DNA from: Haliotis rubra
Lineage: Eukaryota
Length of the DNA stretch: 64,000 bases
Direction of reading: 5' to 3'
Assembly (NCBI RefSeq): GCF_003918875.1
Contig: NW_025766248.1
Location: forward strand, 1 to 64,000
Under the pieces are notes generated by a model. That model was not told the DNA's origin. It was given only the letters and a program-made list of their open reading frames with translations, and did no database searches. Each line of letters starts with the position of its first letter. The first letter of the stretch is position 1. The position numbers were made by a program, and so were the translations under genes. Shown here in pieces: positions 3,388 through 36,544 of the stretch.

Positions 3388-3427
3388 GGGGCGGTGCGGT
3401 ATCCTTGTAGTTAAAGCGCCTGCTCGT
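3388..3427 (+). mobile_element. 5' fragment of tRNA-derived SINE (family A), cut off at the left edge of the array
   Basis: ggggcggtgcggtatccttgtagttaaagcgcctgctcgt matches the head of fuller copies, e.g. the reverse complement of 54710-54748 (gggcggtggagtagcctagtggttaaagcgttcgctcgt). Confidence 0.65.
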
Positions 3428-3443
3428 TACTTGTTTCTTGCAG

Positions 3444-3501
3444 GCATGCGTATCAAGCAAAAATTCCCCATGGACGAACGGGGCATGTCCTTTGGGTGGT
3501 G
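3444..3501 (+). pseudogene. Truncated copy of the last (SH3) exon at the left edge of the array
   Basis: Reads ttcttgcAG|GC ATG CGT ATC AAG CAA AAA TTC CCC ATG GAC GAA CGG GGC ATG TCC TTT GGG TGG TG and then joins spacer sequence directly. About 175 bp are deleted relative to full units. Confidence 0.85.
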
Positions 3502-4534
3502 CCTTTCTTGGATCTGACAAAGTGGGGTCTGAAGTCGGGTGAAGCAGGTGGGGCTGTTTCTCAGGGAGACTGATATTGAGAGTAGCACAGAAAAGCGGCC
3601 GTAAAATGCGCGTGGCCGTAGTGGGGTCTGAAGTGGGGTCAAGCAGGTCGGGCGGGTTCATGTACCTTTGAAGTAGTCCCATTCGACTGTGAAAGTGGGG
3701 ACTCGGGCTGTGGCGGGTAGATGAGATTCCACGTGCGTCACCCCCGAATGTAGGGAGGGTCAGACACAGCAGTTCAGTGGACCAATAATGGGACATGGCT
3801 TCCTCGATCAAGGGACTATTTCAGTTGTGGACACTACCAGGCCCGTCGAATCCCTACGCGCGTCGCTGTTCATGATCTTTCATTGGAAAAGTACAGATGG
3901 GTACTGGCAAATAAGGCTGTATGAATCGAATATACAAACAGAACATGCAAGTCACTCAAATTTTCTACCAATCCATTGCACATACCAGGGAGTGTAATTT
4001 ACTCTATCGTACTTACACAGGGCTGGCCTCTAATCGCAAGGGAAATCGGAAAATCAAAAGGTGAGCCTCTAGATACAGGCGTAAGAACAAATATACATGG
4101 TTTGATGATATACACAGTTTGCTAAAACCACGAAGTTAAACTTGGGCCGCTTCACTCCCACGCACAACACCCAAGCTATCTATGTACACCATACATTTTT
4201 CCTGAGGAAACACTAAAGGAGGGTAGTATAGGTATCGAGCTCCCTAATTATAAGCCGGACTAAGTGGGAACTGAATATTGCTATAGAATTATAAAATCAT
4301 CCCAAATAATCCCCGAACATTCAGGGCTGCTCAACAATCGGAAACAACACAGACTTCTGACTTTGAGTCTGCTGGCAGAATGGATGTTTAGTTTTCATCT
4401 TCATTTTCCCTCACACTAGAAGATGTAGCCTTTTCAGTGGCACATGGCGGGATGGCACTGACAAATTCTCGCCACATGCATTAAGGGTCACATACTACCA
4501 CGTATAAAATGTCATAGCTAAATTGACAACCATT

Positions 4535-5337
4535 AAGAATTGCGACTTTCCTTATCTTTCGTCTCATTGCTCGCAGAAACGATATTGTTTTATGTTACTA
4601 ATTTTGTCGTATACTTGAGGATATAATCTCTATAATGATATATGGCACCACATCATCCATGTAATAGTGTAGGCGTGATAAATACCTGAAAGTATGAGGT
4701 CCATTTACTAAAGTCGGTAAACCCTCAAGAATTGCGACTTTTGGTATCTATGGTCTCATTGCTCTCAGAAACGATATTTTTCTGTGATTGTAATTTTGTC
4801 ATATACTTGAGGATATGTGCTTTTTAATGATATATGGAACGATATCATCGACAAAATGGTACATGAGCAATCAATTTCTGAACTTGTTATTCCCGGATAC
4901 TTGCACGCTTAAAGTTGGACTGAAAGTCGGCAAAACTTGCGAATTGCGACTTTTAGTATCTCTCGTCTCCCTCCTCGCAGACAAGATATTTATCTATGAT
5001 TGGGATTTTGTCGTATACTTGAGGATATAATCCCTTCAATGATATGCGGCACGATATCATCCATAAAATTGTGTGGGCGTAATAAATATCTGAATTTATG
5101 AGGTCCATATACTCAAGTCTGTAAGACTAAAGTATTGCGACTTTCGGTATCGTTTGCCTTCCTCCTGGCAGACCAGATATCAATCTATAATTGTAATCTT
5201 GTCATATACTTGAGGATATAATCTTTCTAATGATATATGACACGATATCATCGACAAAATGGTAGAGGAATAACCAGTTCCTGGACTTATGAGCTCCATA
5301 TACTTGCACACATCAATTTGGACTAAAATCGGCAACC
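4535..5337 (+). repeat. Internal ~190-210-bp sub-repeat x4 (A-B-A-B) present in every array unit
   Basis: Monomers start at ~4535, 4727, 4939 and 5130 with (a)gaattgcgacttt and share tgtc(g/a)tatacttgaggatat. Monomers 1 and 3 share gt(a/g)ggcgt...atgaggtccat. Monomers 2 and 4 share atcatcgacaaaatggta...acttgcac...ttggact. Confidence 0.9.
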
Positions 5338-5574
5338 GTCAAAGACCAACACACTCAGCATCTCATGCGGGCCACGCTTCTCGGTGACGGGATATCTGTC
5401 TATGTTCCTGTATTCCCCGCATATTTCCAGACTGCCATGTTAATGCATGTCGTACCCAGCCTGCAATAAGCTGGGCCCCGTCTTGCATGTCGCTAGTTGG
5501 TGCGCGCAAAGGGAGCCAGGAACCAGCTTAAGCCTGCAATGACGGACTTTACCGAGACGTGACGGAATCGTTTC

Positions 5575-5586
5575 TGTGACGTCACA
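5575..5586. promoter_or_regulatory. Palindromic CRE (TGTGACGTCACA) about 95 bp upstream of the predicted ATG, in every unit
   Basis: Full consensus TGACGTCA at 5577-5584 inside a 12-bp palindrome, within a CpG-rich stretch. Function is inferred. Confidence 0.5.
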
Positions 5587-5680
5587 ATCGCAAGGCCGCC
5601 ATTGCCTGAGTAGCAACCAGTTTCGCATCAGTTGACCGCATAAGCTCTGCCCAAATTGTCTTTTCTCTGCGTTTCCAAGT

Positions 5681-8600
5681 ATGAACGAGATCCATCTACC
5701 CGATTTTCATCATCTCCAGAACGACGGGGAACTGTAAGTAACTTTCTTTGGTTCCATTCTGCACGCAGTGTGACGGAATCTCAAATTAAATGTAACGGAC
5801 GTTCTCGTTGCTATGTCCGAGTTGGACGCCATTTTGTACATAACTTCAACAAGGTCTACCCAGATACATAAAAGAATTCCAGCAATCAATCTGCCTTAAA
5901 TGCCTCATCCCGTTCCCCTTTTCTAACTGTGTAAAGTCTATTTAGAATTGTCGACAATATTGGCGATGATATTCTTACATTTTCGCCCTAAAACAATATG
6001 CCAATTTCGTGCCCAATCGCGTAACAATAGCCCCTACTTTATCACAGGTCAGATGGAGTTCATGTTGTCTGTTTACAGCTTGAACCCTTCTCGTTTCTGG
6101 GTGGACATAATGAAGTCCCGGGTAGGCATCAGCAATTCATACGCCGAAAAGCTGCTCGACTGGTGTCAGGATTGTAGGACTAAGCTTGGCACTGTCAGTC
6201 AAGATGGTAAGCATGCGATTACTTATTCAGCTACTATTCAAAATAACGTTTTGACTGATGTTCCTGTTATGTTGCTTCGGGCACTCCTTTAGGTTTGTTT
6301 TGCTTAATTAGCAGCCCCACAAGTTCTCTTTATTCCGTTTTCAGCTTGTTCCGAGAGTTATGAGATTTGCCATCTTCTAGACTGCTACTTGATATCCTCC
6401 GAACAGGAGGCTAATCATATTCTCGCTGTGTCACGTGATATGACGACCCAGGGTGGACCCATCCATTCTCTAAAAAGGTAAGAGTAATGAACATTTGTTA
6501 GTGTCATTCGTGTGTGACTATATATCCACGTGTTGTTTTGACTGTGTGATTAAAAACATGGACAGAGTGGCATTCATATTAGTGGTTGATGTTTTCAGAT
6601 TGGCCTCGACTAACAGGGGAGGCGTGTTGTCTGAGCACAAGGCCTTGAGCCGGGAACTTCTGTCCCTGACTGAGAGACACATGGTGTGCCTCAAACATCT
6701 TCAGGAGGTGAAGGAGGTGAGTTATTCTGGCGACTGCCCTTAGGATGAAACACTTGAATGTAGTTTGTTTTCTATTCTGAATACTACTGTACACACGCGT
6801 GTTTATTTCAAGTACAATATGACAAGGTGAATGTCTTCTCCATTTTTGCAGAGCGGAATAATGGCCATGGCTGCCTCTCGTAATTATGAAAGGAGAATAA
6901 GCGAGCTGAAGGCTGAGCTAGTGAAAGTGGGGGAAAGGTCCAAGACGTCTCAGCAAAGTATGCTGGAGAAGAAAGTCCGGACTCTGGAGTCCAAGCTGGT
7001 TAAACACAATCAGAAGGAGCAGACCCACAAAGCCCGTTATGAGTGCCTGTTGAAAGAGGAAAGCGAGCTTGTGAACAGGCTGAGAAAGGTGAGCATTAAA
7101 AACAGGGGTGCTCACATCTGAGTTTCCAGCCATTCCTACTCATTCTTTGAAGGACTCCTTTCTTACAGAACTGTTTATCTTAATCCCTTTGTAACCCCCT
7201 TTCTCTGTGTGAGTAAACGCTCCACTTACTGAAACCTATACATGCACATGCACATGCCATGTAAAGCACCAACGTTCATTCACGTCTGTCTCTCAATCTT
7301 GTTTACGTCTGTTTTGTGCTTGTGTTTTTTCTGTCCTTCTCTTTGTTACTTTTTAGTTTGTTTGCTTTCCTTTCTCTATCTATTCCCTGTTCTGTTTGTC
7401 CCCTCCCTCCCTCCACCCACCCAGACCTCTGACCATGCATGTCAAGAAGCATGTGACCTGCAGAAGAGTCAGTTGGAGTCCTTGATCTCCAGTCTCAGAG
7501 ACTTTGTTGTCAAGACATGCTCGCCTGACAACGGTGACAGGTACAGCAATAGGGCTGGCTTATCTGTGTTACAGTGTATTGATCCAAAGTTTTGATGCTC
7601 TTTCCTTTTCTCCCTCTCTCTGTGTTTCTCTCCAAGTGTTGAATAGTAATCAGGATCGGGTAGAAGAAAGCTATGATCATTGCATCAGTGTGTACCGGCT
7701 CCCTCACTTTTAATTGCATTTAGAGTTAATCTTCTAAATGACTGAGTCAGACTGACTTGTCTTTGCGTTGCTTTGATAGTTAACCTATGCTTTGTTTATA
7801 TTAATGAAGGTATTGTGTGTTGCTTCAGGAGCAGCTTCCTGAAGGCGGCCATTGATGACATAGCTGTCGATGACATCATCAATGCCACCTGTGATGTCAC
7901 CTCACAGAAGTACATCTTCCCAGATGTTCAGGCCTGGCATGGGAAGTTTGGCTTCTTGGAGAAAATTCCAACCCCGTTCGTCCGAGCATCGGATGTGGCC
8001 ATTAGACGAGATCCAAAGAAAGGCCTGACTGAGGAGAACCTCCTGGCACAAGAAATCATGTCAGCCATTGGCCAGCCCGTTCACAGTCGCAGACGCTGGA
8101 TCTCTAAGTCTAGTACCAAGAATGGTGACAACGGTGACTTCAACAACAACGAATCTGTTACTGTCATCTCAAAAGGTAAATGGAGTCTTGTATTATACAT
8201 GTATAAAACTCTGTCTGTGAGGACACTTCATATTGCTTTAAACTTTAAAATTTACGAAAGAGATTATATGGTAAGATGCAGATGTTCAATCAATTTTTGT
8301 GTCTCTCCTCAGCTGCAGTGGAGGAGGACGTGAAGTATCTGGAAGACGTGTATGTGCGCGTTATCCGCCCCTTCAAGCCCACCCACCCTGAGCACCTCCA
8401 GCTGAATCTGGGTGAGTGTTCCCAAGGAGCAGTGTCTGTAACACTCATGCATGGGATGTAGGAGCGGCCATTGTTGCGTCCATAGATGACCATGTAAGCA
8501 TGCTACATGTACGAGGTTAGTCTGAGTGGTCCTTCTGTTGGGAGTGGAAGTGAAGCAAGTGATTACTAAAACTGTGCATGCTGCGTGTCTCTTTGTATAT

Positions 8601-8776
8601 TTGTATGGTTCTCTTGGATTATGGTGTTACTTCTGTTTCTTGCAGGCATGCGTATCAAGCAAAAATTCCCCATGGACGTACGGGGCATGTCCTTTGGGTG
8701 GTGTCGGCGTGGGCTTGGGGGTCGGAAGAAGCGGCATGGATTTTACCCTGCAGATCACGTGATCTTGGAGAACTAG
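5681..8776 (+). CDS. Divergent PACSIN/syndapin-like F-BAR + SH3 protein, copy 1 (intact, 9 exons, 453 aa)
   Basis: Exons 5681-5733, 6079-6206, 6345-6477, 6599-6716, 6852-7088, 7425-7540, 7829-8175, 8313-8411 and 8646-8776. All introns are GT-AG with compatible phases; total 1362 nt with no internal stop. Motifs resembling PACSIN (compared from memory): SRVGISNSYAEKLLDW ~ ERAKIEKAYAQQLTDW; ARYECLL...CQEACDLQKSQLESL ~ EKYEKVL...FEQCQQFEEKRLVFL; LKAAIDDI...FPDVQAW ~ LEQAIRGA...WPQFEEW. The C-terminus VYVRVIRPFKPTHPEHLQLNLGMRIKQKFPMDVRGMSFGWCRRGLGGRKKRHGFYPADHV is SH3-like. Exon 1 is the least certain; an alternative start is the ATG at 6053. Confidence 0.85.
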
Positions 8777-11060
8777 ACTTTCATTTCATTTCAGTTGTAT
8801 ATGTTGTAAAAACTTTATTTTCTACTGTGAATACACATTGATGAAGGTGTACACATTTTGTCTGTTTTCATTACTCTGTGCCTTCCTTGGATCTGACAAA
8901 GTGGGGTCTGAAGTCGGGTGAAGCAGGTGGGGCTGTTTCTCAGGGAGACTGATATTGAGAGTAGCACAGAAAAGCGGCCGTAAAATGCGCGTGGCCGTAG
9001 TGGGGCCTGAAGTGGGGTCAAGCAGGTCGGGCGGGTTCATGTACCTTTGAAGTAGTCCCATTCGACTGTGAAAGTGGGGACTCGGGCTGTGGCGGGTAGA
9101 TGAGATTCCACGTGCGTCACCCCCGAATGTAGGGAGGGTCAGACACAGCAGTTCAGTGGACCAATAATGGGACATGGCTTCCTCGATCAAGGGACTATTT
9201 CAGTTGTGGACACTACCAGGCCCGTCGAATCCCTACGCGCGTCGCTGTTCATGATCTTTCATTGGAAAAAGTACAGATGGGTACTGGCAAATAAGGCTGT
9301 ATGAATCGAATATACAAACAGAACATGCAAGTCACTCAAATTTTCTACCAATCCATTGCACATACCAGGGAGTGTAATTTACTCTATCGTACTTACACAG
9401 GGCTGGCCTCTAATCGCAAGGGAAATCGGAAAATCAAAAGGTGAGCCTCTAGATACAGGCGTAAGAACAAATATACATGGTTTGATGATATACACAGTTT
9501 GCTAAAACCACGAAGTTAAACTTGGGCCGCTTCACTCCCACGCACAACACCCAAGCTATCTATGTACACCATACATTTTTCCTGAGGAAACACTAAAGGA
9601 GGGTAGTATAGGTATCGAGCTCCCTAATTATAAGCCGGACTAAGTGGGAACTGAATATTGCTATAGAATTATAAAATCATCCCAAATAATCCCCGAACAT
9701 TCAGGGCTGCTCAACAATCGGAAACAACACAGACTTCTGACTTTGAGTCTGCTGGCAGAATGGATGTTTAGTTTTCATCTTCATTTTCCCTCACACTAGA
9801 AGATGTAGCCTTTTCAGTGGCACATGGCGGGATGGCACTGACAAATTCTCGCCACATGCATTAAGGGTCACATACTACCACGTATAAAATGTCATAGCTA
9901 AATTGACAACCATTAAGAATTGCGACTTTCGTTATCTTTCGTCTCATTGCTCGCAGAAACGATATTGTTTTATGTTACTAATTTTGTCGTATACTTGAGG
10001 ATATAATCTCTATAATGATATATGGCACCACATCATCCATGTAATAGTGTAGGCGTGATAAATACCTGAAAGTATGAGGTCCATTTACTAAAGTCGGTAA
10101 ACCTAAAGAATTGCGACTTTTTGGTATCTATGGTCTCATTGCTCTCAGAAACGATATTTTTCTGTGATTGTAATTTTGTCATATACTTGAGGATATGTGC
10201 TTTTTAATGATATATGGAACGATATCATCGACAAAATGGTACATGAGCAATCAATTTCTGAACTTGTTATTCCCGGATACTTGCACGCTTAAAGTTGGAC
10301 TGAAAGTCGGCAAAACTTGCGAATTGCGACTTTTAGTATCTCTCGTCTCCCTCCTCGCAGACAAGATATTTATCTATGATTGGGATTTTGTCGTATACTT
10401 GAGGATATAATCCCTTCAATGATATGCGGCACGATATCATCCATAAAATAGTGTAGGCGTAATAAATATCTGAATTTATGAGGTCCATATACTCAAGTCT
10501 GTAAGACTAAAGTATTGCGACTTTCGGTATCGTTTGCCTTCCTCCTGGCAGACCAGATATCAATCTATAATTGTAATCTTGTCATATACTTGAGGATATA
10601 ATCTTTCTAATGATATATGACACGATATCATCGACAAAATGGTACAGGAATAACCAGTTCCTGGACTTATGAGCTCCATATACTTGCACACATCAATTTG
10701 GACTAAAATCGGCAACCGTCAAAGACCAACACACTCAGCATCTCATGCGGGCCACGCTTCTCGGTGACGGGATATCTGTCTATGTTCCTGTATTCCCCGC
10801 ATATTTCCAGACTGCCATGTTAATGCATGTCGTACCCAGCCTGCAATAAGCTGGGCCCCGTCTTGCATGTCGCTAGTTGGTGCGCGCAAAGGGAGCCAGG
10901 AACCAGCTTAAGCCTGCAATGACGGACTTTACCGAGACGTGACGGAATCGTTTCTGTGACGTCACAATCGCAAGGCCGCCATTGCCTGAGTAGCAACCAG
11001 TTTCGCATCAGTTGACCGCATAAGCTCTGCCCAAATTGTCTTTTCTCTGCGTTTCCAAGT

Positions 11061-14000
11061 ATGAACGAGATCCATCTACCCGATTTTCATCATCTCCAGA
11101 ACGACGGGGAACTGTAAGTAACTTTCTTTGGTTCCATTCTGCACGCAGTGTGACGGAATCTCAAATTAAATGTAACGGACGTTCTCGTTGCTATGTCCGA
11201 GTTGGACGCCATTTTGTACATAACTTCAACAAGGTCTACCCAGATACATAAAAGAATTCCAGCAATCAATCTGCCTTAAATGCCTCATCCCGTTCCCCTT
11301 TTCTAACTGTGTAAAGTCTATTTAGAATTGTCGACAATATTGGCGATGATATTCTTACATTTTCGCCCTAAAACAATATGCCAATTTCGTGCCCAATCGC
11401 GTAACAATAGCCCCTACTTTATCACAGGTCAGATGGAGTTCATGTTGTCTGTTTACAGCTTGAACCCTTCTCGTTTCTGGGTGGACATAATGAAGTCCCG
11501 GGTAGGCATCAGCAATTCATACGCCGAAAAGCTGCTCGACTGGTGTCAGGATTGTAGGACTAAGCTTGGCACTGTCAGTCAAGATGGTAAGCATGCGATT
11601 ACTTATTCAGCTACTATTCAAAATAACGTTTTGACTGATGTTCCTGTTATGTTGCTTCGGGCACTCCTTTAGGTTTGTTTTGCTTAATTAGCAGCCCCAC
11701 AAGTTCTCTTTATTCCGTTTTCAGCTTGTTCCGAGAGTTATGAGATTTGCCATCTTCTAGACTGCTACTTGATATCCTCCGAACAGGAGGCTAATCATAT
11801 TCTCGCTGTGTCACGTGATATGACGACCCAGGGTGGACCCATCCATTCTCTAAAAGGTAAGAGTAATGAACATTTGTTAGTGTCATTCGTGTGTGACTAT
11901 ATATCCACGTGTTGTTTTGACTGTGTGATTAAAAACATGGACAGAGTGGCATTCATATTAGTGGTTGATGTTTTCAGATTGGCCTCGACTAACAGGGGAG
12001 GCGTGTTGTCTGAGCACAAGGCCTTGAGCCGGGAACTTCTGTCCCTGACTGAGAGACACATGGTGTGCCTCAAACATCTTCAGGAGGTGAAGGAGGTGAG
12101 TTATTCTGGCGACTGCCCTTAGGATGAAACACTTGAATGTAGTTTGTTTTCTATTCTGAATACTACTGTACACACGCGTGTTTATTTCAAGTACAATATG
12201 ACAAGGTGAATGTCTTCTCCATTTTTGCAGAGCGGAATAATGGCCATGGCTGCCTCTCGTAATTATGAAAGGAGAATAAGCGAGCTGAAGGCTGAGCTAG
12301 TGAAAGTGGGGGAAAGGTCCAAGACGTCTCAGCAAAGTATGCTGGAGAAGAAAGTCCGGACTCTGGAGTCCAAGCTGGTTAAACACAATCAGAAGGAGCA
12401 GACCCACAAAGCCCGTTATGAGTGCCTGTTGAAAGAGGAAAGCGAGCTTGTGAACAGGCTGAGAAAGGTGAGCATTAAAAACAGGGGTGCTCACATCTGA
12501 GTTTCCAGCCATTCCTACTCATTCTTTGAAGGACTCCTTTCTTACAGAACTGTTTATCTTAATCCCTTTGTAACCCCCTTTCTCTGTGTGAGTAAACGCT
12601 CCACTTACTGAAACCTATACATGCACATGCACATGCACATGCCATGTAAAGCACCAACGTTCATTCACGTCTGTCTCTCAATCTTGTTTACGTCTGTTTT
12701 GTGCTTGTGTTTTTTCTGTCCTTCTCTTTGTTACTTTTAGTTTGTTTGTTTTCCTTTCTCTATCTATTCCCTGTTCTGTTTGTCCCCCTCCCTCCCTCCA
12801 CCCACCCAGACCTCTGACCATGCATGTCAAGAAGCATGTGACCTGCAGAAGAGTCAGTTGGAGTCCTTGATCTCCAGTCTCAGAGACTTTGTTGTCAAGA
12901 CATGCTCGCCTGACAACGGTGACAGGTACAGCAATAGGGCTGGCTTATCTGTGTTACAGTGTATTGATCCAAAGTTTTGATGCTCTTTCCTTTTCTCCCT
13001 CTCTCTGTGTTTCTCTCCAAGTGTTGAATAGTAATCAGGATCGGGTAGAAGAAAGCTATGATCATTGCATCAGTGTGTACCGGCTCCCTCACTTTTAATT
13101 GCATTTAGAGTTAATCTTCTAAATGACTGAGTCAGACTGACTTGTCTTTGCGTTGCTTTGATAGTTAACCTATGCTTTGTTTATATTAATGAAGGTATTG
13201 TGTGTTGCTTCAGGAGCAGCTTCCTGAAGGCGGCCATTGATGACATAGCTGTCGATGACATCATCAATGCCACCTGTGATGTCACCTCACAGAAGTACAT
13301 CTTCCCAGATGTTCAGGCCTGGCATGGGAAGTTTGGCTTCTTGGAGAAAATTCCAACCCCGTTCGTCCGAGCATCGGATGTGGCCATTAGACGAGATCCA
13401 AAGAAAGGCCTGACTGAGGAGAACCTCCTGGCACAAGAAATCATGTCAGCCATTGGCCAGCCCGTTCACAGTCGCAGACGCTGGATCTCTAAGTCTAGTA
13501 CCAAGAATGGTGACAACGGTGACTTCAACAACAACGAATCTGTTACTGTCATCTCAAAAGGTAAATGGAGTCTTGTATTATACATGTATAAAACTCTGTC
13601 TGTGAGGACACTTCATATTGCTTTAAACTTTAAAATTTACGAAAGAGATTATATGGTAAGATGCAGATGTTCAATGAATTTTTGTGTCTCTCCTCAGCTG
13701 CAGTGGAGGAGGACGTGAAGTATCTGGAAGACGTGTATGTGCGCGTTATCCGCCCCTTCAAGCCCACCCACCCTGAGCACCTCCAGCTGAATCTGGGTGA
13801 GTGTTCCCAAGGAGCAGTGTCTGTAACACTCATGCATGGGATGTAGGAGCGGCCATTGTTGCGTCCATAGATGACCATGTAAGCATGCTACATGTACGAG
13901 GTTAGTCTGAGTGGTCCTTCTGTTGGGAGTGGAAGTGAAGCAAGTGATTACTAAAACTGTGCATGCTGCGTGTCTCTTTGTATATTTGTATGGTTCTCTT

Positions 14001-14161
14001 GGATTATGGTGTTACTTCTGTTTCTTGCAGGCATGCGTATCAAGCAAAAATTCCCCATGGACGTACGGGGCATGTCCTTTGGGTGGTGTCGGCGTGGGCT
14101 TGGGGGTCGGAAGAAGCGGCATGGATTTTACCCTGCAGATCACGTGATCTTGGAGAACTAG
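11061..14161 (+). pseudogene. PACSIN-like gene copy 2 (frameshifted as assembled)
   Basis: Same exons as copy 1, but the end of exon 3 reads CTAAAAG|GT with one A missing (~11852-11855), causing an early stop in exon 4. This is a homopolymer indel and could be an error. Confidence 0.7.
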
Positions 14162-24800: not shown

Positions 24801-24928
24801 ATGCGTATCAAGCAAAATTCCCCATGGACGTACGGGGCATGTCCTTTGGGTGGTGTCGGCGTGGGCTTGGGGGTCGGAAGAAGCGGCATGGATTTTACCC
24901 TGCAGATCACGTGATCTTGGAGAACTAG
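21824..24928 (+). pseudogene. PACSIN-like gene copy 4 (frameshifted as assembled)
   Basis: 2-bp TA insertion in exon 3 (ttgatatatcc, ~22536-22541) and one A missing in exon 9 (agcaaaattc, ~24811-24820). Confidence 0.7.
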
Positions 24929-27211
24929 ACTTTCATTTCATTTCAGTTGTATATGTTGTAAAACTTTATTTTCTACTGTGAATACACATTGATGAAGGTG
25001 TACACATTTTGTCTGTTTTCATTACTCTGTGCCTTCCTTGGATCTGACAAAGTGGGGTCTGAAGTCGGGTGAAGCAGGTGGGGCTGTTTCTCAGGGAGAC
25101 TGATATTGAGAGTAGCACAGAAAAGCGGCCGTAAAATGCGCGTGGCCGTAGTGGGGTCTGAAGTGGGGTCAAGCAGGTCGGGCGGGTTCATGTACCTTTG
25201 AAGTAGTCCCATTCGACTGTGAAAGTGGGGACTCGGGCTGTGGCGGGTAGATGAGATTCCACGTGCGTCACCCCCGAATGTAGGGAGGGTCAGACACAGC
25301 AGTTCAGTGGAACAATAATGGGACATGGCTTCCTCGATCAAGGGACTATTTCAGTTGTGGACACTACCAGGCCCGTCGAATCCCTACGCGCGTCGCTGTT
25401 CATGATCTTTCATTGGAAAAAGTACAGATGGGTACTGGCAAATAAGGCTGTATGAATCGAATATACAAACAGAACATGCAAGTCACTCAAATTTTCTACC
25501 AATCCATTGCACATACCAGGGAGTGTAATTTACTCTATCGTACTTACACAGGGCTGGCCTCTAATCGCAAGGGAAATCGGAAAATCAAAAGGTGAGCCTC
25601 TAGATACAGGCGTAAGAACAAATATACATGGTTTGATGATATACACAGTTTGCTAAAACCACGAAGTTAAACTTGGGCCGCTTCACTCCCACGCACAACA
25701 CCCAAGCTATCTATGTACACCATACATTTTTCCTGAGGAAACACTAAAGGAGGGTAGTATAGGTATCGAGCTCCCTAATTATAAGCCGGACTAAGTGGGA
25801 ACTGAATATTGCTATAGAATTATAAAATCATCCCAAATAATCCCCGAACATTCAGGGCTGCTCAACAATCGGAAACAACACAGACTTCTGACTTTGAGTC
25901 TGCTGGCAGAATGGATGTTTAGTTTTCATCTTCATTTTCCCTCACACTAGAAGATGTAGCCTTTTCAGTGGCACATGGCGGGATGGCACTGACAAATTCT
26001 CGCCACATGCATTAAGGGTCACATACTACCACGTATAAAATGTCATAGCTAAATTGACAACCATTAAGAATTGCGACTTTCCTTATCTTTCGTCTCATTG
26101 CTCGCAGAAACGATATTGTTTTATGTTACTAATTTTGTCGTATACTTGAGGATATAATCTCTATAATGATATATGGCACCACATCATCCATGTAATAGTG
26201 TAGGCGTGATAAATACCTGAAAGTATGAGGTCCATTTACTAAAGTCGGTAAACCTAAAGAATTGCGACTTTTGGTATCTATGGTCTCATTGCTCTCAGAA
26301 ACGATATTTTTCTGTGATTGTAATTTTGTCATATACTTGAGGATATGTGCTTTTTAAGGATATATGGAACGATATCATCGACAAAATGGTACATGAGCAA
26401 TCAATTTCTGAACTTGTTCTTCCCGGATACTTGCACGCTTAAAGTTGGACTGAAAGTCGGCAAAACTTGCGAATTGCGACTTTTAGTATCTCTCGTCTCC
26501 CTCCTCGCAGACAAGATATTTATCTATGATTGGGATTTTGTCGTATACTTGAGGATATAATCCCTTCAATGATATGCGGCACGATATCATCCATAAAATA
26601 GTGTAGGCGTAATAAATATCTGAATTTATGAGGTCCATATACTCAAGTCTGTAAGACTAAAGTATTGCGACTTTCGGTATCGTTTGCCTTCCTCCTGGCA
26701 GACCAGATATCAATCTATAATTGTAATCTTGTCATATACTTGAGGATATCATCTTTCTAATGATATATGACACGATATCATCGACAAAATGGTACAGGAA
26801 TAACCAGTTCCTGGACTTATGAGCTCCATATACTTGCACACATCAATTTGGACTAAAATCGGCAACCGTCAAAGACCAACACACTCAGCATCTCATGCGG
26901 GCCACGCTTCTCGGTGACGGGATATCTGTCTATGTTCCTGTATTCCCCGCATATTTCCAGACTGCCATGTTAATGCATGTCGTACCCAGCCTGCAATAAG
27001 CTGGGCCCCGTCTTGCATGTCGCTAGTTGGTGCGCCGCAAAGGGAGCCAGGAACCAGCTTAAGCCTGCAATGACGGACTTTACCGAGACGTGACGGAATC
27101 GTTTCTGTGACGTCACAATCGCAAGGCCGCCATTGCCTGAGTAGCAACCAGTTTCGCATCAGTTGACCGCATAAGCTCTGCCCAAATTGTCTTTTCTCTG
27201 CGTTTCCAAGT

Positions 27212-30200
27212 ATGAACGAGATCCATCTACCCGATTTTCATCATCTCCAGAACGACGGGGAACTGTAAGTAACTTTCTTTGGTTCCATTCTGCACGCAGT
27301 GTGACGGAATCTCCAAATTAAATGTAACGGACGTTCTCGTTGCTATGTCCGAGTTGGACGCCATTTTGTACATAACTTCAACAAGGTCTACCCAGATACA
27401 TAAAAGAATTTCAGCAATCAATCTGCCTTAAATGCCTCATCCCGTTCCCCTTTTCTAACTGTGTAAAAGTCTATTTAGAATTGTCGACAATATTGGCGAT
27501 GATATTCTTACATTTTCGCCCTAAAACAATATGCCAATTTCGTGCCAAATCGCGTAACAATAGCCCCTACTTTATCACAGGTCAGATGGAGTTCATGTTG
27601 TCTGTTTACAGCTTGAACCCTTCTCGTTTCTGGGTGGACATAATGAAGTCCCGGGTAGGCATCAGCAATTCATACGCCGAAAAGCTGCTCGACTGGTGTC
27701 AGGATTGTAGGACTAAGCTTGGCACTGTCAGTCAAGATGGTAAGCATGCGATTACTTATTCAGCTACTATTCAAAATAACGTTTTGACTGATGTTCCTGT
27801 TATGTTGCTTCGGGCACTCCTTTAGGTTTGTTTTGCTTAATTAGCAGCCCCACAAGTTCTCTTTATTCCGTTTTCAGCTTGTTCCGAGAGTTATGAGATT
27901 TGCCATCTTCTAGACTGCTACTTGATATCCTCCGAACAGGAGGCTAATCATATTCTCGCTGTGTCACGTGATATGACGACCCAGGGTGGACCCATCCATT
28001 CTCTAAAAAGGTAAGAGTAATGAACATTTGTTAGTGTCATTCGTGTGTGACTATATATCCACGTGTTGTTTTGACTGTGTGATTAAAAACATGGACAGAG
28101 TGGCATTCATATTAGTGGTTGATGTTTTCAGATTGGCCTCGACTAACAGGGGAGGCGTGTTGTCTGAGCACAAGGCCTTGAGCCGGGAACTTCTGTCCCT
28201 GACTGAGAGACACATGGTGTGCCTCAAACATCTTCAGGAGGTGAAGGAGGTGAGTTATTCTGGCGACTGCCCTTAGGATGAAACACTTGAATGTAGTTTG
28301 TTTTCTATTCTGAATACTACTGTACACACGCGTGTTTATTTCAAGTACAATATGACAAGGTGAATGTCTTCTCCATTTTGCAGAGCGGAATAATGGCCAT
28401 GGCTGCCTCTCGTAATTATGAAAGGAGAATAAGCGAGCTGAAGGCTGAGCTAGTGAAAGTGGGGGAAAGGTCCAAGACGTCTCAGCAAAGTATGCTGGAG
28501 AAGAAAGTCCGGACTCTGGAGTCCAAGCTGGTTAAACACAATCAGAAGGAGCAGACCCACAAAGCCCGTTATGAGTGCCTGTTGAAAGAGGAAAGCGAGC
28601 TTGTGAACAGGCTGAGAAAGGTGAGCATTAAAACAGGGGTGCTCACATCTGAGTTTCCAGCCATTCCTACTCATTCTTTGAAGGACTCCTTTCTTACAGA
28701 ACTGTTTATCTTAATCCCTTTGTAACCCCCTTTCTCTGTGTGAGTAAACGCTCCACTTACTGAAACCTATACATGCACATGCACATGCCATGTAAAGCAC
28801 CAACGTTCATTCACGTCTGTCTCTCAATCTTGTTTACGTCTGTTTTGTGCTTGTGTTTTTTCTGTCCTTCTCTTTGTTACTTTTTAGTTTGTTTGCTTTC
28901 CTTTCTCTATCTATTCCCTGTTCTGTTTGTCCCCCTCCCTCCCTCCACCCACCCAGACCTCTGACCATGCATGTCAAGAAGCATGTGACCTGCAGAAGAG
29001 TCAGTTGGAGTCCTTGATCTCCAGTCTCAGAGACTTTGTTGTCAAGACATGCTCGCCTGACAACGGTGACAGGTACAGCAATAGGGCTGGCTTATCTGTG
29101 TTACAGTGTATTGATCCAAAGTTTTGATGCTCTTTCCTTTTCTCCCTCTCTCTGTGTTTCTCTCAAGTGTTGAATAGTAATCAGGATCGGGTAGAAGAAA
29201 GCTATGATCATTGCATCAGTGTGTACCGGCTCCCTCACTTTTAATTGCATTTAGAGTTAATCTTCTAAATGACTGAGTCAGACTGACTTGTCTTTGCGTT
29301 GCTTTGATAGTTAACCTATGCTTTGTTTATATTAATGAAGGTATTGTGTGTTGCTTCAGGAGCAGCTTCCTGAAGGCGGCCATTGATGACATAGCTGTCG
29401 ATGACATCATCAATGCCACCTGTGATGTCACCTCACAGAAGTACATCTTCCCAGATGTTCAGGCCTGGCATGGGAAGTTTGGCTTCTTGGAGAAAATTCC
29501 AACCCCGTTCGTCCGAGCATCGGATGTGGCCCATTAGACGAGATCCAAAGAAAGGCCTGACTGAGGAGAACCTCCTGGCACAAGAAATCATGTCAGCCAT
29601 TGGCCAGCCCGTTCACAGTCGCAGACGCTGGATCTCTAAGTCTAGTACCAAGAATGGTGACAACGGTGACTTCAACAACAACGAATCTGTTACTGTCATC
29701 TCAAAAGGTAAATGGAGTCTTGCATTATACATGTATAAAACTCTGTCTGTGAGGACACTTCATATTGCTTTAAACTTTAAAATTTACGAAAGAGATTATA
29801 TGGTAAGATGCAGATGTTCAATCAATTTTTGTGTCTCTCCTCAGCTGCAGTGGAGGAGGACGTGAAGTATCTGGAAGACGTGTATGTGCGCGTTATCCGC
29901 CCCTTCAAGCCCACCCACCCTGAGCACCTCCAGCTGAATCTGGGTGAGTGTTCCCAAGGAGCAGTGTCTGTAACACTCAAGCATGGGATGTAGGAGCGGC
30001 CATTGTTGCGTCCATAGATGACCATGTAAGCATGCTACATGTACGAGGTTAGTCTGAGTGGTCCTTCTGTTGGGAGTGGAAGTGAAGCAAGTGATAACTA
30101 AAACTGTGCATGCTGCGCGTCTTTTTGTATATTTGTATGGTTCTCTTGGATTATGGTGTTACTTCTGTTTCTTGCAGGCATGCGTATCAAGCAAAAATTC

Positions 30201-30308
30201 CCCATGGACGTACGGGGCATGTCCTTTGGGTGGTGTCGGCGTGGGCTTGGGGGTCGGAAGAAGCGGCATGGATTTTATCCTGCAGATCACGTGATCTTGG
30301 AGAACTAG
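27212..30308 (+). pseudogene. PACSIN-like gene copy 5 (frameshifted as assembled)
   Basis: Extra C in exon 7 (gtggcccatt, ~29530). The ORF track shows the split into 29304..29537 and 29401..29865. Confidence 0.7.
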
Positions 30309-32590
30309 ACTTTCATTTCATTTCAGTTGTATATGTTGTAAAAACTTTATTTTCTACTGTGAATACACATTGATGAAGGTGTACACATTTTGTCTGTTTT
30401 CATTACTCTGTGCCTTCCTTGGATCTGACAAAGTGGGGTCTGAAGTCGGGTGAAGCAGGTGGGGCTGTTTCTCAGGGAGACTGATATTGAGAGTAGCACA
30501 GAAAAGCGGCCGTAAAATGCGCGTGGCCGTAGTGGGGTCTGAAGTGGGGTCAAGCAGGTCGGGCGGGTTCATGTACCTTTGAAGTAGTCCCATTCGACTG
30601 TGAAAGTGGGGACTCGGGCTGTGGCGGGTAGATGAGATTCCACGTGCGTCACCCCGAATGTAGGGAGGGTCAGACACAGCAGTTCAGTGGAACAATAATG
30701 GGACATGGCTTCCTCGATCAAGGGACTATTTCAGTTGTGGACACTACCAGGCCCGTCGAATCCCTACGCGCGTCGCTGTTCATGATCTTTCATTGGAAAA
30801 AGTACAGATGGGTACTGGCAAATAAGGCTGTATGAATCGAATATACAAACAGAACATGCAAGTCACTCAAATTTTCTACCAATCCATTGCACATACCAGG
30901 GAGTGTAATTTACTCTATCGTACTTACACAGGGCTGGCCTCTAATCGCAAGGGAAATCGGAAAATCAAAAGGTGAGCCTCTAGATACAGGCGTAAGAACA
31001 AATATACATGGTTTGATGATATACACAGTTTGCTAAAACCACGAAGTTAAACTTGGGCCGCTTCACTCCCACGCACAACACCCAAGCTATCTATGTACAC
31101 CATACATTTTTCCTGAGGAAACACTAAAGGAGGGTAGTATAGGTATCGAGCTCCCTAATTATAAGCCGGACTAAGTGGGAACTGAATATTGCTATAGAAT
31201 TATAAAATCATCCCAAATAATCCCCGAACATTCAGGGCTGCTCAACAATCGGAAACAACACAGACTTCTGACTTTGAGTCTGCTGGCAGAATGGATGTTT
31301 AGTTTTCATCTTCATTTTCCCTCACACTAGAAGATGTAGCCTTTTCAGTGGCACATGGCGGGATGGCACTGACAAATTCTCGCCACATGCATTAAGGGTC
31401 ACATACTACCACGTATAAAATGTCATAGCTAAATTGACAACCATTAAGAATTGCGACTTTCCTTATCTTTCGTCTCATTGCTCGCAGAAACGATATTGTT
31501 TTATGTTACTAATTTTGTCGTATACTTGAGGATATAATCTCTATAATGATATATGGCACCACATCATCCATGTAATAGTGTAGGCGTGATAAATACCTGA
31601 AAGTATGAGGTCCATTTACTAAAGTCGGTAAACCTAAAGAATTGCGACTTTTGGTATCTATGGTCTCATTGCTCTCAGAAACGATATTTTTCTGTGATTG
31701 TAATTTTGTCATATACTTGAGGATATGTGCTTTTTAATGATATATGGAACGATATCATCGACAAAATGGTACATGAGCAATCAATTTCTGAACTTGTTAT
31801 TCCCGGATACTTGCACGCTTAAAGTTGGACTGAAAGTCGGCAAAACTTGCGAATTGCGACTTTTAGTATCTCTCGTCTCCCTCCTCGCAGACAAGATATT
31901 TATCTATGATTGGGATTTTGTCGTATACTTGAGGATATAATCCCTTCAATGATATGCGGCACGATATCATCCATAAAATAGTGTAGGCGTAATAAATATC
32001 TGAATTTATGAGGTCCATATACTCAAGTCTGTAAGACTAAAGTATTGCGACTTTCGGTATCGTTTGCCTTCCTCCTGGCAGACCAGATATCAATCTATAA
32101 TTGTAATCTTGTCATATACTTGAGGATATCATCTTTCTAATGATATATGACACGATATCATCGACAAAATGGTACAGGAATAACCAGTTCCTGGACTTAT
32201 GAGCTCCATATACTTGCACACATCAATTTGGACTAAAATCGGCAACCGTCAAAGACCAACACACTCAGCATCTCATGCGGGCCACGCTTCTCGGTGACGG
32301 GATATCTGTCTATGTTCCTGTATTCCCCGCATATTTCCAGACTGCCATGTTAATGCATGTCGTGCCCAGCCTGCAATAAGCTGGGCCCCGTCTTGCATGT
32401 CGCTAGTTGGTGCGCGCAAAGGGAGCCAGGAACCAGCTTAAGCCTGCAATGACGGACTTTACCGAGACGTGACGGAATCGTTTCTGTGACGTCACAATCG
32501 CAAGGCCGCCATTGCCTGAGTAGCAACCAGTTTCGCAACAGTTGACCGCATAAGTTCTGCCCAAATTGTCTTTTCTCTGCGTTTCCAAGT

Positions 32591-35500
32591 ATGAACGAGA
32601 TCCATCTACCCGATTTTCATCATCTCCAGAACGACGGGGAACTGTAAGTAACTTTCTTTGGTTCCATTCTGCACGCAGTGTGACGGAATCTCCAAATTAA
32701 ATGTAACGGACGTTCTCGTTGCTATGTCCGAGTTGGACGCCATTTTGTACATAACTTCAACAAGGTCTACCCAGATACATCAAAGAATTTTAGCAATCAA
32801 TCTGCCTTAAATGCCTCATCCCGTTCCCCTTTTCTAACTGTGTAAAAAGTCTATTTAGAATTGTCGACAATATTGGCGATGATATTCTTACATTTTCGCC
32901 CTAAAACAATATGCCAATTTCGTGCCAAATCGCGTAACAATAGCCCCTACTTTATCACAGGTCAGATGGAGTTCATGTTGTCTGTTTACAGCTTGAACCC
33001 TTCTCGTTTCTGGGTGGACATAATGAAGTCCCGGGTAGGCATCAGCAATTCATACGCCGAAAAGCTGCTCGACTGGTGTCAGGATTGTAGGACTAAGCTT
33101 GGCACTGTCAGTCAAGATGGTAAGCATGCAATTACTTATTCAGCTACTATTCAAAATAACGTTTTGACTGATGTTCCTGTTATGTTGCTTCGGGCACTCC
33201 TTTAGGTTTGTTTTGCTTAATTAGCAACCCCACAAGTTCTCTTTATTCCGTTTTCAGCTTGTTCCGAGAGTTATGAGATTCGCCATCTTCTAGACTGCTA
33301 CTTGATATCCTCCGAACAGGAGGCTAATCATATTCTCGCTGTGTCACGTGATATGACGACCCAGGGTGGACCCATCCATTCTCTAAAAAGGTAAGAGTAA
33401 TGAACATTTGTTAGTGTCATTCGTGTGTGACTATATATCCACGTGTTGTTTTGACTGTGTGATTATTAAAAACATGGACAGAGTGGCATTCATATTAGTG
33501 GTTGATGTTTTCAGATTGGCCTCGACTAACAGGGGAGGCGTGTTGTCTGAGCACAAGGCCTTGAGCCGGGAACTTCTGTCCCTGACTGAGAGACACATGG
33601 TGTGCCTCAAACATCTTCAGGAGGTGAAGGAGGTGAGTTATTCTGGCGACTGCCCTTAGGATGAAACACTTGAATGTAGTTTGTTTTCTATTCTGAATAC
33701 TACTGTACACACGCGTGTTTATTTCAAGTACAATATGACAAGGTGAATGTCTTCTCCATTTTTGCAGAGCGGAATAATGGCCATGGCTGCCTCTCGTAAT
33801 TATGAAAGGAGAATAAGCGAGCTGAAGGCTGAGCTAGTGAAAGTGGGGGAAAGGTCCAAGACGTCTCAGCAAAGTATGCTGGAGAAGAAAGTCCGGACTC
33901 TGGAGTCCAAGCTGGTTAAACACAATCAGAAGGAGCAGACCCACAAAGCCCGTTATGAGTGCCTGTTGAAAGAGGAAAGCGAGCTTGTGAACAGGCTGAG
34001 AAAGGTGAGCATTAAAAACAGGGGTGCTCACATCTGAGTTTCCAGCCATTCCTACTCATTCTTTGAAGGACTCCTTTCTTACAGAACTGTTTATCTTAAT
34101 CCCTTTGTAACCCCCTTTCTCTGTGTGAGTAAACGCTCCACTTACTGAAACCTATACATGCACATGCCATGTAAAGCACCAACGTTCATTCACGTCTGTC
34201 TCTCAATCTTGTTTACGTCTGTTTTGTGCTTGTGTTTTTTCTGTCCTTCTCTTTGTTACTTTTTAGTTTGTTTGCTTTCCTTTCTCTATCTATTCCCTGT
34301 TCTGTTTGTCCCCCTCCCTCCCTCCACCCACCCAGACCTCTGACCATGCATGTCAAGAAGCATGTGACCTGCAGAAGAGTCAGTTGGAGTCCTTGATCTC
34401 CAGTCTCAGAGACTTTGTTGTCAAGACATGCTCGCCTGACAACGGTGACAGGTACAGCAATAGGGCTGGCTTATCTGTGTTACAGTGTATTGATCCAAAG
34501 TTTTGATGCTCTTTCCTTTTCTCCCCTCTCTGTGTTTCTCTCCAAGTGTTGAATAGTAATCAGGATCGGGTAGAAGAAAGCTATGATCATTGCATCAGTG
34601 TGTACCGGCTCCCTCACTTTTAATTGCATTTAGAGTTAATCTTCTAAATGACTGAGTCAGACTGACTTGTCTTTGCGTTGCTTTGATAGTTAACCTATGC
34701 TTTGTTTATATTAATGAAGGTATTGTGTGTTGCTTCAGGAGCAGCTTCCTGAAGGCGGCCATTGATGACATAGCTGTCGATGACATCATCAATGCCACCT
34801 GTGATGTCACCTCACAGAAGTACATCTTCCCAGATGTTCAGGCCTGGCATGGGAAGTTTGGCTTCTTGGAGAAAATTCCAACCCCGTTCGTCCGAGCATC
34901 GGATGTGGCCATTAGACGAGATCCAAAGAAAGGCCTGACTGAGGAGAACCTCCTGGCACAAGAAATCATGTCAGCCATTGGCCAGCCCGTTCACAGTCGC
35001 AGACGCTGGATCTCTAAGTCTAGTACCAAGAATGGTGACAACGGGACTTCAACAACAACGAATCTGTTACTGTCATCTCAAAAGGTAAATGGAGTCTTGC
35101 ATTATACATGTATAAAACTCTGTCTGTGAGGACACTTCATATTGCTTTAAACTTTAAAATTTACGAAAGAGATTATATGGTAAGATGCAGATGTTCAATC
35201 AATTTTTGTGTCTCTCCTCAGCTGCAGTGGAGGAGGACGTGAAGTATCTGGAAGACGTGTATGTGCGCGTTATCCGCCCCTTCAAGCCCACCCACCCTGA
35301 GCACCTCCAGCTGAATCTGGGTGAGTGTTCCCAAGGAGCAGTGTCTGTAACACTCATGCATGGGATGTAGGAGCGGCCATTGTTGCGTCCATAGATGACC
35401 ATGTAAGCATGCTACATGTACGAGGTTAGTCTGAGTGGTCCTTCTGTTGGGAGTGGAAGTGAAGCAAGTGATTACTAAAACTGTGCATGCTGCGTGTCTC

Positions 35501-35685
35501 TTTGTATATTTGTATGGTTCTCTTGGATTATGGTGTTACTTCTGTTTCTTGCAGGCATGCGTATCAAGCAAAAATTCCCCATGGACGTACGGGGCATGTC
35601 CTTTGGGTGGTGTCGGCGTGGGCTTGGGGGTCGGAAGAAGCGGCATGGATTTTATCCTGCAGATCACGTGATCTTGGAGAACTAG
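32591..35685 (+). pseudogene. PACSIN-like gene copy 6 (frameshifted as assembled)
   Basis: 1-bp deletion in exon 7 (aacgggac versus aacggtgac, ~35044). Also a TGC>CGC (C>R) change in exon 3. Confidence 0.7.
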
Positions 35686-36067
35686 ACTTTCATTTCATTT
35701 CAGTTGTATATGTTGTAAAAACTTTATTTTCTACTGTGAATACACATTGATGAAGGTGTACACATTTTGTCTGTTTTCATTACTCTGTGCCTTCCTTGGA
35801 TCTGACAAAGTGGGGTCTGAAGTCGGGTGAAGCAGGTGGGGCTGTTTCTCAGGGAGACCGATATTGAGAGTAGCACAGAAAAGCGGTCGTAAAATGCGCG
35901 TGACCGTAGTGGGGTCAAGCAGGTCGGGCGGGTTCATGTACCTTTGAAGTAGTCCCATTCGACTGCATGTGAAAGTGGGGACTCGGGCTGTGGCGGGTAG
36001 ATGAGATTCCACGTGCGTCACCCCCGAATGTAGGGAGGGTCAAACACAGCAGTTCAGTGGGTTAGTC

Positions 36068-36420: not shown

Positions 36421-36544
36421 ATCGTTTTGTACTTGCGAGCCACCACATGGCAGGCTGCTGAACCCGAGAGTATTATCTTCCTAGACACACACATTGTTTA
36501 ACATCTGTCTTGCATCCTGATTGTCCCTTGTCTAGATTATTATC

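What the first reader, a model, noticed from the sequence alone, without database searches (positions are those of the whole stretch)
3427..36060. Recently amplified tandem array of a hidden, intron-containing, divergent PACSIN/syndapin-like gene
Seen: six ~5.38-kb near-identical units, each with nine phase-compatible GT-AG exons that splice to a 453-aa F-BAR-like + SH3 protein. The ORF track shows only fragments of it. Known: PACSIN/syndapin is normally a conserved, low-copy membrane-shaping and endocytic gene. Inference: a paralogue this diverged in protein yet amplified into near-identical tandem copies fits the pattern of ampliconic germline, conflict or immune genes (Sdic, Stellate, TSPY-type arrays). 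This is the best candidate in the window for an undescribed system.
Basis: partly seen in the sequence, partly recalled or inferred. Interest (0 to 1): 0.9.

Follow-up and report, generated by a model that had tools for sequence, protein, structure and literature searches.

The report
Abalone-specific F-BAR/SH3-like gene tandem array
Six near-identical 5.4-kb tandem repeats in the blacklip abalone genome each carry a nine-exon gene for an abalone-only protein that looks like a very divergent PACSIN-type membrane-bending adaptor; the gene is real and conserved, but nothing tested here marks it as a conflict gene.

Summary
The repeat is real. There are six head-to-tail units of 5,379-5,386 bp at 3621-35916, 99.2-99.7% identical, with partial copies at both edges (3426-3635; 35908-36415). 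The window is Haliotis rubra contig QXJH01000222.1, positions 1-64000. Unit 1 splices through nine GT-AG exons into an intact 453-aa ORF. The same nine exon sizes give the annotated proteins of H. rufescens and H. asinina. Units 2-6 each carry one or two frameshifting indels as assembled. These are probably Nanopore errors: 1-bp homopolymer indels are about ten times over-represented compared with the PacBio HiFi H. rufescens array, and they are not depleted in exons, whereas substitutions are (2 of 32, P=0.006). The protein family was found only in Haliotis, is named "uncharacterized protein", and has no Pfam domain above threshold. Several weak but concordant lines point to an N-terminal F-BAR and a C-terminal SH3. 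dN/dS is 0.19-0.27 overall and 0.05-0.07 in the SH3-like part, which means purifying selection. Copies group by species, so amplification is recent or the copies evolve in concert. The conflict or germline reading is untested for expression and not supported by evolutionary rate.

The parts
3426..3635 (+). Left edge of the array: a fragment of the exon-9 region (unit positions about 5012-5089) joined to the unit's last ~140 bp
   Evidence: blastn of a unit against the window
3621..8999 (+). Unit 1, the only copy with an intact 453-aa ORF. Exons: 5681-5733, 6079-6206, 6345-6477, 6599-6716, 6852-7088, 7425-7540, 7829-8175, 8313-8411, 8646-8776. RefSeq LOC124277477 annotates only residues 93-453
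9000..14384 (+). Unit 2. The gene spans 11061-14161. One A is missing from the A5 run at the end of exon 3 (after 11851), so the first stop falls at codon 121
14385..19764 (+). Unit 3. The gene spans 16444-19541. It has the same 1-bp deletion as unit 2 (after 17235)
19765..25150 (+). Unit 4. The gene spans 21824-24928. There is an AT insertion in exon 3 (22536-22537) and a 1-bp A deletion in exon 9 (after 24813)
25151..30531 (+). Unit 5. The gene spans 27212-30308. There is an extra C in exon 7 (29530)
30532..35916 (+). Unit 6, the most diverged unit. The gene spans 32591-35685. A T is missing in exon 7 (after 35044). Its frameshifted product is RefSeq XP_046569121.1 (P0007)
4537..5335 (+). 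Two ~400-bp tandem copies (78-79% alike, each with a ~191-bp sub-period) in the spacer upstream of each gene. They recur in every unit (9917-10715, 15303-16098, 20682-21478, 26068-26865, 31448-32245). They are candidate sites of unequal crossing-over
35908..36060 (+). Start of a seventh unit (unit positions 12-160) at the right edge
36065..36415 (+). Diverged relic of the exon-9 region: 90% nucleotide identity to the units, 76% amino-acid identity over residues 411-452

Best explanation
The region is a genuine tandem array in Haliotis rubra. The repeating unit is a 3.1-kb nine-exon gene plus a 2.3-kb spacer. The gene encodes a 453-aa intracellular protein found only in abalones. Its most likely build is a very divergent N-terminal F-BAR (membrane-curvature) domain of about 285 residues, a ~100-residue linker, and an unusually basic SH3-like C-terminus. 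This is the architecture of PACSIN/syndapin and PSTPIP adaptors.

Shown: the array, the gene model, its conservation under purifying selection across four species, tandem amplification in a second species, and grouping of copies by species.

Inferred: (a) the array grew, and is kept uniform, by unequal crossing-over or gene conversion, probably in the ~400-bp direct repeats of the spacer; (b) the frameshifts in units 2-6 are Nanopore homopolymer errors, so most copies are really intact; (c) the protein links membranes to SH3 ligands and the amplification raises its dose in some tissue. Point (c) is the weakest step.
For: Array and gene model. The identical exon structure gives the database proteins in H. 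rufescens and H. asinina.

Range: only Haliotis proteins were found, all unnamed.

A second array: at least four genes at a ~5.7-kb pitch in the H. rufescens locus fetched, and ten loci in all on that 13-Mb scaffold, in a PacBio HiFi assembly.

Selection: pairwise dN/dS is 0.19-0.27, and 0.05-0.07 in the SH3-like part. Only 2 of 32 substitution columns between units lie in exons, which make up 25% of the unit (P=0.006).

Error signature: 22 of 28 indel events are 1 bp, 19 of those lie in homopolymers, and indels are not depleted in exons. The substitution-to-indel ratio is about 1:1 here, against 44:4, 65:7 and 29:5 in the HiFi array. The assembly was Nanopore with Racon and one round of Pilon.

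Fold: Foldseek's top 18 PDB hits are PACSIN F-BAR domains, and the top 8 Swiss-Prot models are PACSIN1/2/3. The C-terminal model has five strands plus a short helix, and all 50 listed PDB hits are SH3 domains. Language-model features give FCH for residues 1-290 alone (0.91, 176 shared features) and SH3 for the C-terminus alone (0.88). Pfam FCH is sub-threshold in 11 of 15 members. Intersectin SH3 aligns over its full length at E=0.83.

Copies group by species. The spacer-plus-gene layout is shared by three species.
Against: No Pfam FCH or SH3 model reaches its cut-off (best FCH score 14.5 bits in the run that reported bits, against 27.8 required; no SH3 hit at E<=10). A family profile finds no F-BAR or SH3 chain in the PDB at E<=10.

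Both AlphaFold models have low confidence (mean pLDDT 48.7 and 48.1), and the Foldseek E-values are only 1e-3 to 1e-2. A geometry-only aligner gives generic long-helix matches.

As assembled, five of six copies are broken. No reads could be examined, so real pseudogenes are not excluded. No expression data were available.
Confidence: 0.7

Rival explanations
1. Array of mostly dead copies. The frameshifts in units 2-6 and in the copy on the second contig are real, so only one gene of seven works and the rest are young pseudogenes.
For: Each of units 2-6 has one or two frameshifting indels as assembled. RefSeq had to build truncated models of 228-401 aa. The unit-6 deletion is not in a homopolymer.
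Against: Nineteen of 22 1-bp indels lie in homopolymers. Indels are spread evenly over exons and non-exons, while substitutions avoid exons. The indel excess relative to substitutions is about tenfold compared with the HiFi array of H. rufescens, where all but one of the eleven annotated models of that array are full length.
Confidence: 0.15
2. Assembly artefact in copy number. The H. rubra locus really holds one copy, or some other number, and the six units are an over-expansion or a mix of haplotypes in a Nanopore hybrid meta-assembly.
For: A second contig (QXJH01000166.1) has the same left flank (0.17% different), one unit only, and then a right flank homologous to the window's. Two individuals were sequenced.
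Against: The units differ by their own substitutions, with divergence rising from units 1-4 to units 5 and 6. The single copy on the other contig differs from every unit by 12-19 substitutions, and its right flank is only ~90% identical, so it is not a collapsed version of this array. Tandem arrays of the same unit exist in an independent HiFi assembly of another species.
Confidence: 0.1
3. One reading: an ampliconic germline, conflict or immune gene whose copy number is driven by an arms race.
For: Near-identical tandem copies, found only in one genus, copies uniform within each species, and a possible 1-versus-6 copy difference between two contigs.
Against: Pairwise dN/dS is 0.19-0.27 with a strongly constrained C-terminal domain. 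There are no expression or sex-linkage data, and no paper was found. Whole-gene pairwise rates cannot exclude selection at a few sites.
Confidence: 0.12
4. The N-terminal part is an unrelated coiled coil rather than an F-BAR domain, and the resemblance to PACSIN comes only from long helices in front of an SH3-like end.
For: No Pfam or PDB sequence match. Equally weak Pfam hits to other helical families such as HisK-N-like and KELK. VIA-align and the AFDB cluster search give mixed helical proteins.
Against: Foldseek ranks PACSIN F-BAR chains first in two libraries, followed by other F-BAR proteins such as FCHO, FBP17, GAS7 and ARHGAP45. Features of residues 1-290 alone give FCH clusters for all ten best named hits. 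The FCH sub-threshold hit lies at the expected N-terminal position, residues 28-85.
Confidence: 0.2

Closest known systems
PACSIN / syndapin (F-BAR + SH3 endocytic adaptors)
   Same: Length (~450 aa) and order of parts: a helical N-terminal ~285 residues, a linker, then a C-terminal ~65-residue SH3-like domain. PACSIN F-BAR structures are the top Foldseek hits. PACSIN clusters are among the top feature hits.
   Different: Sequence identity is 10-17% in the fold alignments. No Pfam FCH or SH3 hit reaches threshold. There is no NPF motif. The SH3-like domain is strongly basic, pI 10.2. The family is restricted to Haliotis and is multi-copy in tandem. Orthology or descent from PACSIN was not tested.
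PSTPIP1/2 and other F-BAR+SH3 adaptors (nostrin, FCHSD, CIP4/TOCA)
   Same: The same two-domain logic. PSTPIP1 and nematode FCH+SH3 clusters score as high as PACSIN in the feature search. The best SH3 structural and sequence hit is the intersectin-1 SH3d chain of the FCHSD2-ITSN1 complex.
   Different: There is no HR1 or second SH3. The ranking among F-BAR subfamilies rests on weak scores.
Tandem multi-copy gene arrays kept uniform by unequal crossing-over (ampliconic genes such as Sdic, Stellate, TSPY)
   Same: Head-to-tail units of a few kb at more than 99% identity. Copies are more alike within a species than between species.
   Different: No evidence of germline-limited expression, sex linkage or fast protein evolution. 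The coding sequence is under purifying selection.

Membership tests
PACSIN/syndapin | N-terminal FCH/F-BAR domain recognised by the family model (Pfam PF00611) | tested here: not met
   Best score 14.5 bits (E=0.046, residues 28-85) against a cut-off of 27.8. There are sub-threshold hits in 11 of 15 members, best E=0.011.
PACSIN/syndapin | F-BAR fold (elongated helical bundle) at the N-terminus | tested here: inconclusive
   The AF2 model has mean pLDDT 48.7 (55-87 over residues 40-280) with long helices at 33-56, 63-94, 115-169 and 176-254. The top 18 Foldseek PDB hits are PACSIN F-BAR, E about 1e-2, TM by target 0.44-0.53. Swiss-Prot models of PACSIN1/2/3 come first. The geometry-only aligner does not discriminate.
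PACSIN/syndapin | C-terminal SH3 domain | tested here: inconclusive
   No Pfam SH3 hit at E<=10. phmmer finds intersectin-1 SH3 at E=0.83 over the whole domain. The AF2 model has pLDDT 48 but five strands plus a short helix in SH3 order. All 50 listed Foldseek PDB hits are SH3 domains, best E=0.037. The feature search scores 0.88 to SH3 clusters.
PACSIN/syndapin | NPF motifs in the linker (EHD binding; present in PACSIN1/2 according to my own knowledge, not checked here) | tested here: not met
   There is no NPF in the 453-aa product.
PACSIN/syndapin | Groups with PACSINs in a phylogeny that includes the species' canonical PACSIN | not testable with these tools
   No PACSIN sequence could be obtained, and the sequence similarity is too low for a tree.
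Ampliconic germline/conflict gene arrays | Near-identical tandem copies | tested here: met
   Six units at 99.2-99.7% identity.
Ampliconic germline/conflict gene arrays | Fast or positively selected protein evolution | tested here: not met
   Nei-Gojobori dN/dS is 0.19-0.27 between species and 0.05-0.07 in the SH3-like part. No site-level test was run.
Ampliconic germline/conflict gene arrays | Germline-restricted expression or sex linkage | not testable with these tools
   No RNA-seq or sex-specific depth data were available.

The most novel reading that the evidence does not exclude
An abalone-specific offshoot of the F-BAR/SH3 adaptors has gained a new partner specificity through its basic SH3-like domain with altered binding-site residues. 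Its copy number varies between haplotypes and species (1 versus 6 in H. rubra, 2 dispersed in H. asinina, ten or more in H. rufescens) because dose is under lineage-specific selection in a specialised tissue such as gametes or haemocytes.
Probability: 0.15. Interest if true: 0.6.

Novelty: new variant of a known kind. Interest (0 to 1): 0.4.

Why it matters
The work gives a fold-level name, probable F-BAR + SH3, to a genus-restricted family that public annotation lists only as 'uncharacterized protein' with no domain. It shows the family is conserved yet repeatedly multi-copy in abalones. It also shows that the H. rubra reference probably misreports five of six copies as broken because of homopolymer errors, which is a caution for anyone using that annotation. 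If dose or copy-number variation proves functional, the locus would be a tractable case of recent gene amplification in a farmed mollusc. As it stands it is a moderately interesting lineage-specific paralogue, not a new kind of system.

Tried and rejected
- Pfam on raw ORF pieces of a unit gave nothing useful.
- Rfam on the whole window found no family.
- My first gene model started at an internal ATG with a short exon 3. It was out of phase in unit 2. It was corrected after the unit alignment showed a 1-bp deletion and the homologue P0001 showed 12 more residues in exon 3.
It found only a Haliotis protein and one 97-aa fragment from an unidentified read set, so the F-BAR part never had an exhaustive search.
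- Family profiles against PDB sequences returned only a chance hit, syncytin-2.
- VIA-align on the full model gave generic long-helix matches. AFDB clusters gave a mixed list.
No profile-profile test against real PACSINs was therefore possible.
- The window's own spliced protein has no reference, so the database proteins P0011 and P0012 (H. rubra, 99-100% identical over the residues they share) and P0006 (H. asinina, 90%) were used as stand-ins for Pfam, folding and atlas searches.
- Literature searches for abalone plus PACSIN or F-BAR, for the LOC identifiers and for the read-set accession found nothing.
- Synteny between the window's flanks and the H. asinina locus showed only interspersed repeats.
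Full report
**Observation.** A self-comparison shows six head-to-tail units starting at 3621, 9000, 14385, 19765, 25151 and 30532 and ending at 35916. They are 5,379-5,386 bp long and 99.2-99.7% identical. Each spacer holds two ~400-bp tandem copies that are 78-79% alike. The left edge (3426-3635) is a piece of the exon-9 region fused to the end of a unit. The right edge has the first 160 bp of a seventh unit (35908-36060), followed by a 90%-identical relic of the exon-9 region (36065-36415). Units 1-4 differ from each other by 4-9 substitutions. Unit 5 differs from units 1-4 by 11-16, and unit 6 differs from units 1-5 by 16-21.

**Gene model.** Nine exons with GT-AG borders on the + strand of unit 1 add up to 1,362 nt, which is 453 aa plus a stop. 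The exons are 5681-5733, 6079-6206, 6345-6477, 6599-6716, 6852-7088, 7425-7540, 7829-8175, 8313-8411 and 8646-8776. The product aligns end to end with a 450-aa database protein at 78% identity. An exact splice-mapping of the database proteins onto their own loci in H. rufescens and H. asinina recovers the same nine exon sizes, so the model is right.

It does not hold for 'each' unit, however. As assembled, units 2 and 3 lack one A of an A5 run in exon 3. Unit 4 has an AT insertion in exon 3 and lacks an A in exon 9. Unit 5 has an extra C in exon 7, and unit 6 lacks a T in exon 7.

**Origin of the window.** The truncated RefSeq proteins of Haliotis rubra reproduce these frameshifts exactly. For example, the 383-aa XP_046569121.1 is the unit-6 product. 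Their loci lie at the same coordinates on contig QXJH01000222.1 of GCA_003918875.1. The window is therefore the first 64 kb of that contig. Public annotation already has six unnamed models here (LOC124277477, 277464, 277465, 277467, 277512, 277469), all truncated. Even the model for intact unit 1 starts at residue 93.

**Are the frameshifts real?** The assembly was built from Nanopore reads polished with Racon and one round of Pilon (PMC6774278).
- Among the six units there are 32 substitution columns and 28 indel events. Twenty-two of the indels are 1 bp, and 19 of those sit in homopolymers.
- Substitutions avoid exons: 2 of 32 fall in the 25% of the unit that is exon (P=0.006). One is synonymous and the other is C69R. 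Indels do not avoid exons: 5 of 28.
- In the PacBio HiFi assembly of H. rufescens (PMC9709998), neighbouring units of the homologous array differ by 44:4, 65:7 and 29:5 substitutions to indel events. The ratio here is about 1:1.
- All but one of the eleven annotated H. rufescens models of that array are full length, at 449 or 453 aa.

I infer that most or all of the frameshifts are assembly errors. This needs reads to prove.

**The family.**
- An exhaustive HMMER search with exon 7 and a word-seeded search with a full-length member found only Haliotis proteins.
- H. rubra has the six loci above plus one on another contig.
- H. rufescens has ten loci (eleven annotated models) on one 13-Mb scaffold, plus a diverged paralogue on another scaffold.
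- H. cracherodii has one. H. asinina has two.
- All are called 'uncharacterized protein' and none carries a precomputed Pfam domain.
- In H. rufescens the genes sit in tandem at a ~5.7-kb pitch, and the whole unit, spacer repeats included, is homologous to the H. rubra unit.
- The two H. asinina copies lie ~90 kb apart in opposite orientation. One has the spacer (up to the ~400-bp repeat) downstream and a repeat copy upstream. The other has the full spacer upstream.
- The spacer-gene arrangement is therefore old, and the ~400-bp repeats mark the ends of the duplicated segment. That fits unequal crossing-over, but it remains an inference.

**Selection and history.** Nei-Gojobori dN/dS between species is 0.19-0.27, with dS of 0.21-0.25 for rubra-asinina and 0.43 for rubra-rufescens. 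For the SH3-like last 68 residues dN/dS is 0.05-0.07. A protein tree groups copies by species with full support. The H. rufescens array copies form one group next to H. cracherodii, and the second H. rufescens paralogue lies outside both. Within-array divergence in H. rubra is 0.07-0.4%, about a hundredth of the rubra-asinina dS. The arrays were therefore either amplified recently and separately, or they are kept uniform by concerted evolution.

**What the protein is.**
- *Pfam.* No FCH or SH3 hit above threshold. FCH appears sub-threshold at residues 28-85 (14.5 bits against a cut-off of 27.8) and in 11 of 15 members, best E=0.011.
- *PDB sequence searches.* Family profiles find no F-BAR or SH3 chain.
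- *Full-length AlphaFold model.* Built from four sequences, it is poor (pLDDT 48.7) but all-helical over residues 20-290 with three long helices.
- *Foldseek on that model.* PACSIN/syndapin F-BAR crystal structures take ranks 1-18, followed by other F-BAR proteins among the next ranks (GAS7, FBP17, FCHO2, srGAP2, PSTPIP1), at E about 1e-2 and TM by target about 0.5. PACSIN1/2/3 are also first among Swiss-Prot models.
- *C-terminal 78 residues folded alone.* The model is again of low confidence (pLDDT 48) but has five strands and a short helix in SH3 order. All 50 listed PDB hits are SH3 domains. phmmer aligns the whole domain to intersectin-1 SH3 at E=0.83.
- *Language-model features.* FCH+SH3 clusters for the whole protein (0.91), FCH for residues 1-290 alone (0.91, 176 shared features), and SH3 for the C-terminus alone (0.88).
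- *Other properties.* There is no NPF motif, and the SH3-like part is basic with pI 10.2. The N-terminus shows no hydrophobic leader by eye; no signal-peptide predictor was run.

I put the F-BAR + SH3 reading at about 75%. Membership in PACSIN proper was not shown.

**Mechanism.** The most likely account is an intracellular adaptor that dimerises through a divergent F-BAR domain on membranes and recruits partners through an atypical SH3. Its gene dose was raised by tandem amplification. The first part follows from the fold assignment. The dose argument is inference. The conflict or germline idea is not excluded, but it has no support beyond the amplification itself.

**A second contig.** The first 19 kb of QXJH01000166.1 carries, in order:
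- the same left flank (0.17% substitutions);
- one unit that differs from every unit here by 12-19 substitutions in the gene;
- a right flank homologous to 36508-39340 but only ~90% identical, with no exon-9 relic.

This is either an unpurged haplotype with one copy, which would mean copy-number polymorphism, or a paralogous segment. I could not decide between them.

**Verdict.** This is a real, recently homogenised tandem array of a conserved, abalone-restricted gene that is undescribed in the papers searched, with a probable F-BAR/SH3 build. It is a new variant of a known kind of protein in a common kind of genomic arrangement, and of moderate interest.

Noticed in passing
L007 (GCA_003918875.1 QXJH01000166.1, first 19.4 kb, reversed) versus window 1-9139 and 36508-39340: A second H. 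rubra contig has the same left flank and a single gene unit, followed by a right flank only ~90% identical to the window's. It may be a one-copy haplotype (copy-number polymorphism) or a paralogous segment. An IBR/RNF216-like gene lies further left on that contig.
   Followed up: partly
window 5681-6439 (unit 1): The RefSeq model for unit 1 (LOC124277477, 361 aa) starts at residue 93, although exons 1-3 are intact in the sequence. The full 453-aa product of H. rubra is therefore absent from the public protein set.
   Followed up: yes
window 61467-63048: A 68-bp tandem repeat with about 23 copies and 93% matches.
   Followed up: no
window 48913-49114: A 96-bp unit repeated 2.1 times at 98% identity, inside a 193-aa minus-strand ORF that is probably spurious.
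   Followed up: no
window 38657-38870, 48298-48480, 55478-55712, 58026-58296: Copies of a ~200-270-bp interspersed repeat in both orientations, 74-90% identical to sequence at L002:6734-7834 near the H. asinina gene. It is probably a SINE or MITE-like element common in Haliotis.
   Followed up: no
L004 (Logan contig DRR299178_541023, 1,276 bp): A genomic fragment from an unidentified read set carries exons 7 and 8 of a homologue at ~66-68% nucleotide identity to the three Haliotis species compared, with internal deletions in exon 7. It suggests a more distant relative or a decayed copy outside the sampled species.
   Followed up: partly
L001 (H. rufescens JALGQA010000023.1:5304877-5328002): The H. 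rufescens array has two subtypes, 449 and 453 aa, differing by a 12-nt stretch at the end of exon 7 (335 versus 347 nt). One 279-aa model (P0016) diverges in sequence after exon 6.
   Followed up: partly
window 543-897: An 81%-identical match on the minus strand to L002:19683-20030, inside the ankyrin/SOCS-box gene next to the H. asinina copy. It may be a trace of shared synteny or just a repeat.
   Followed up: no
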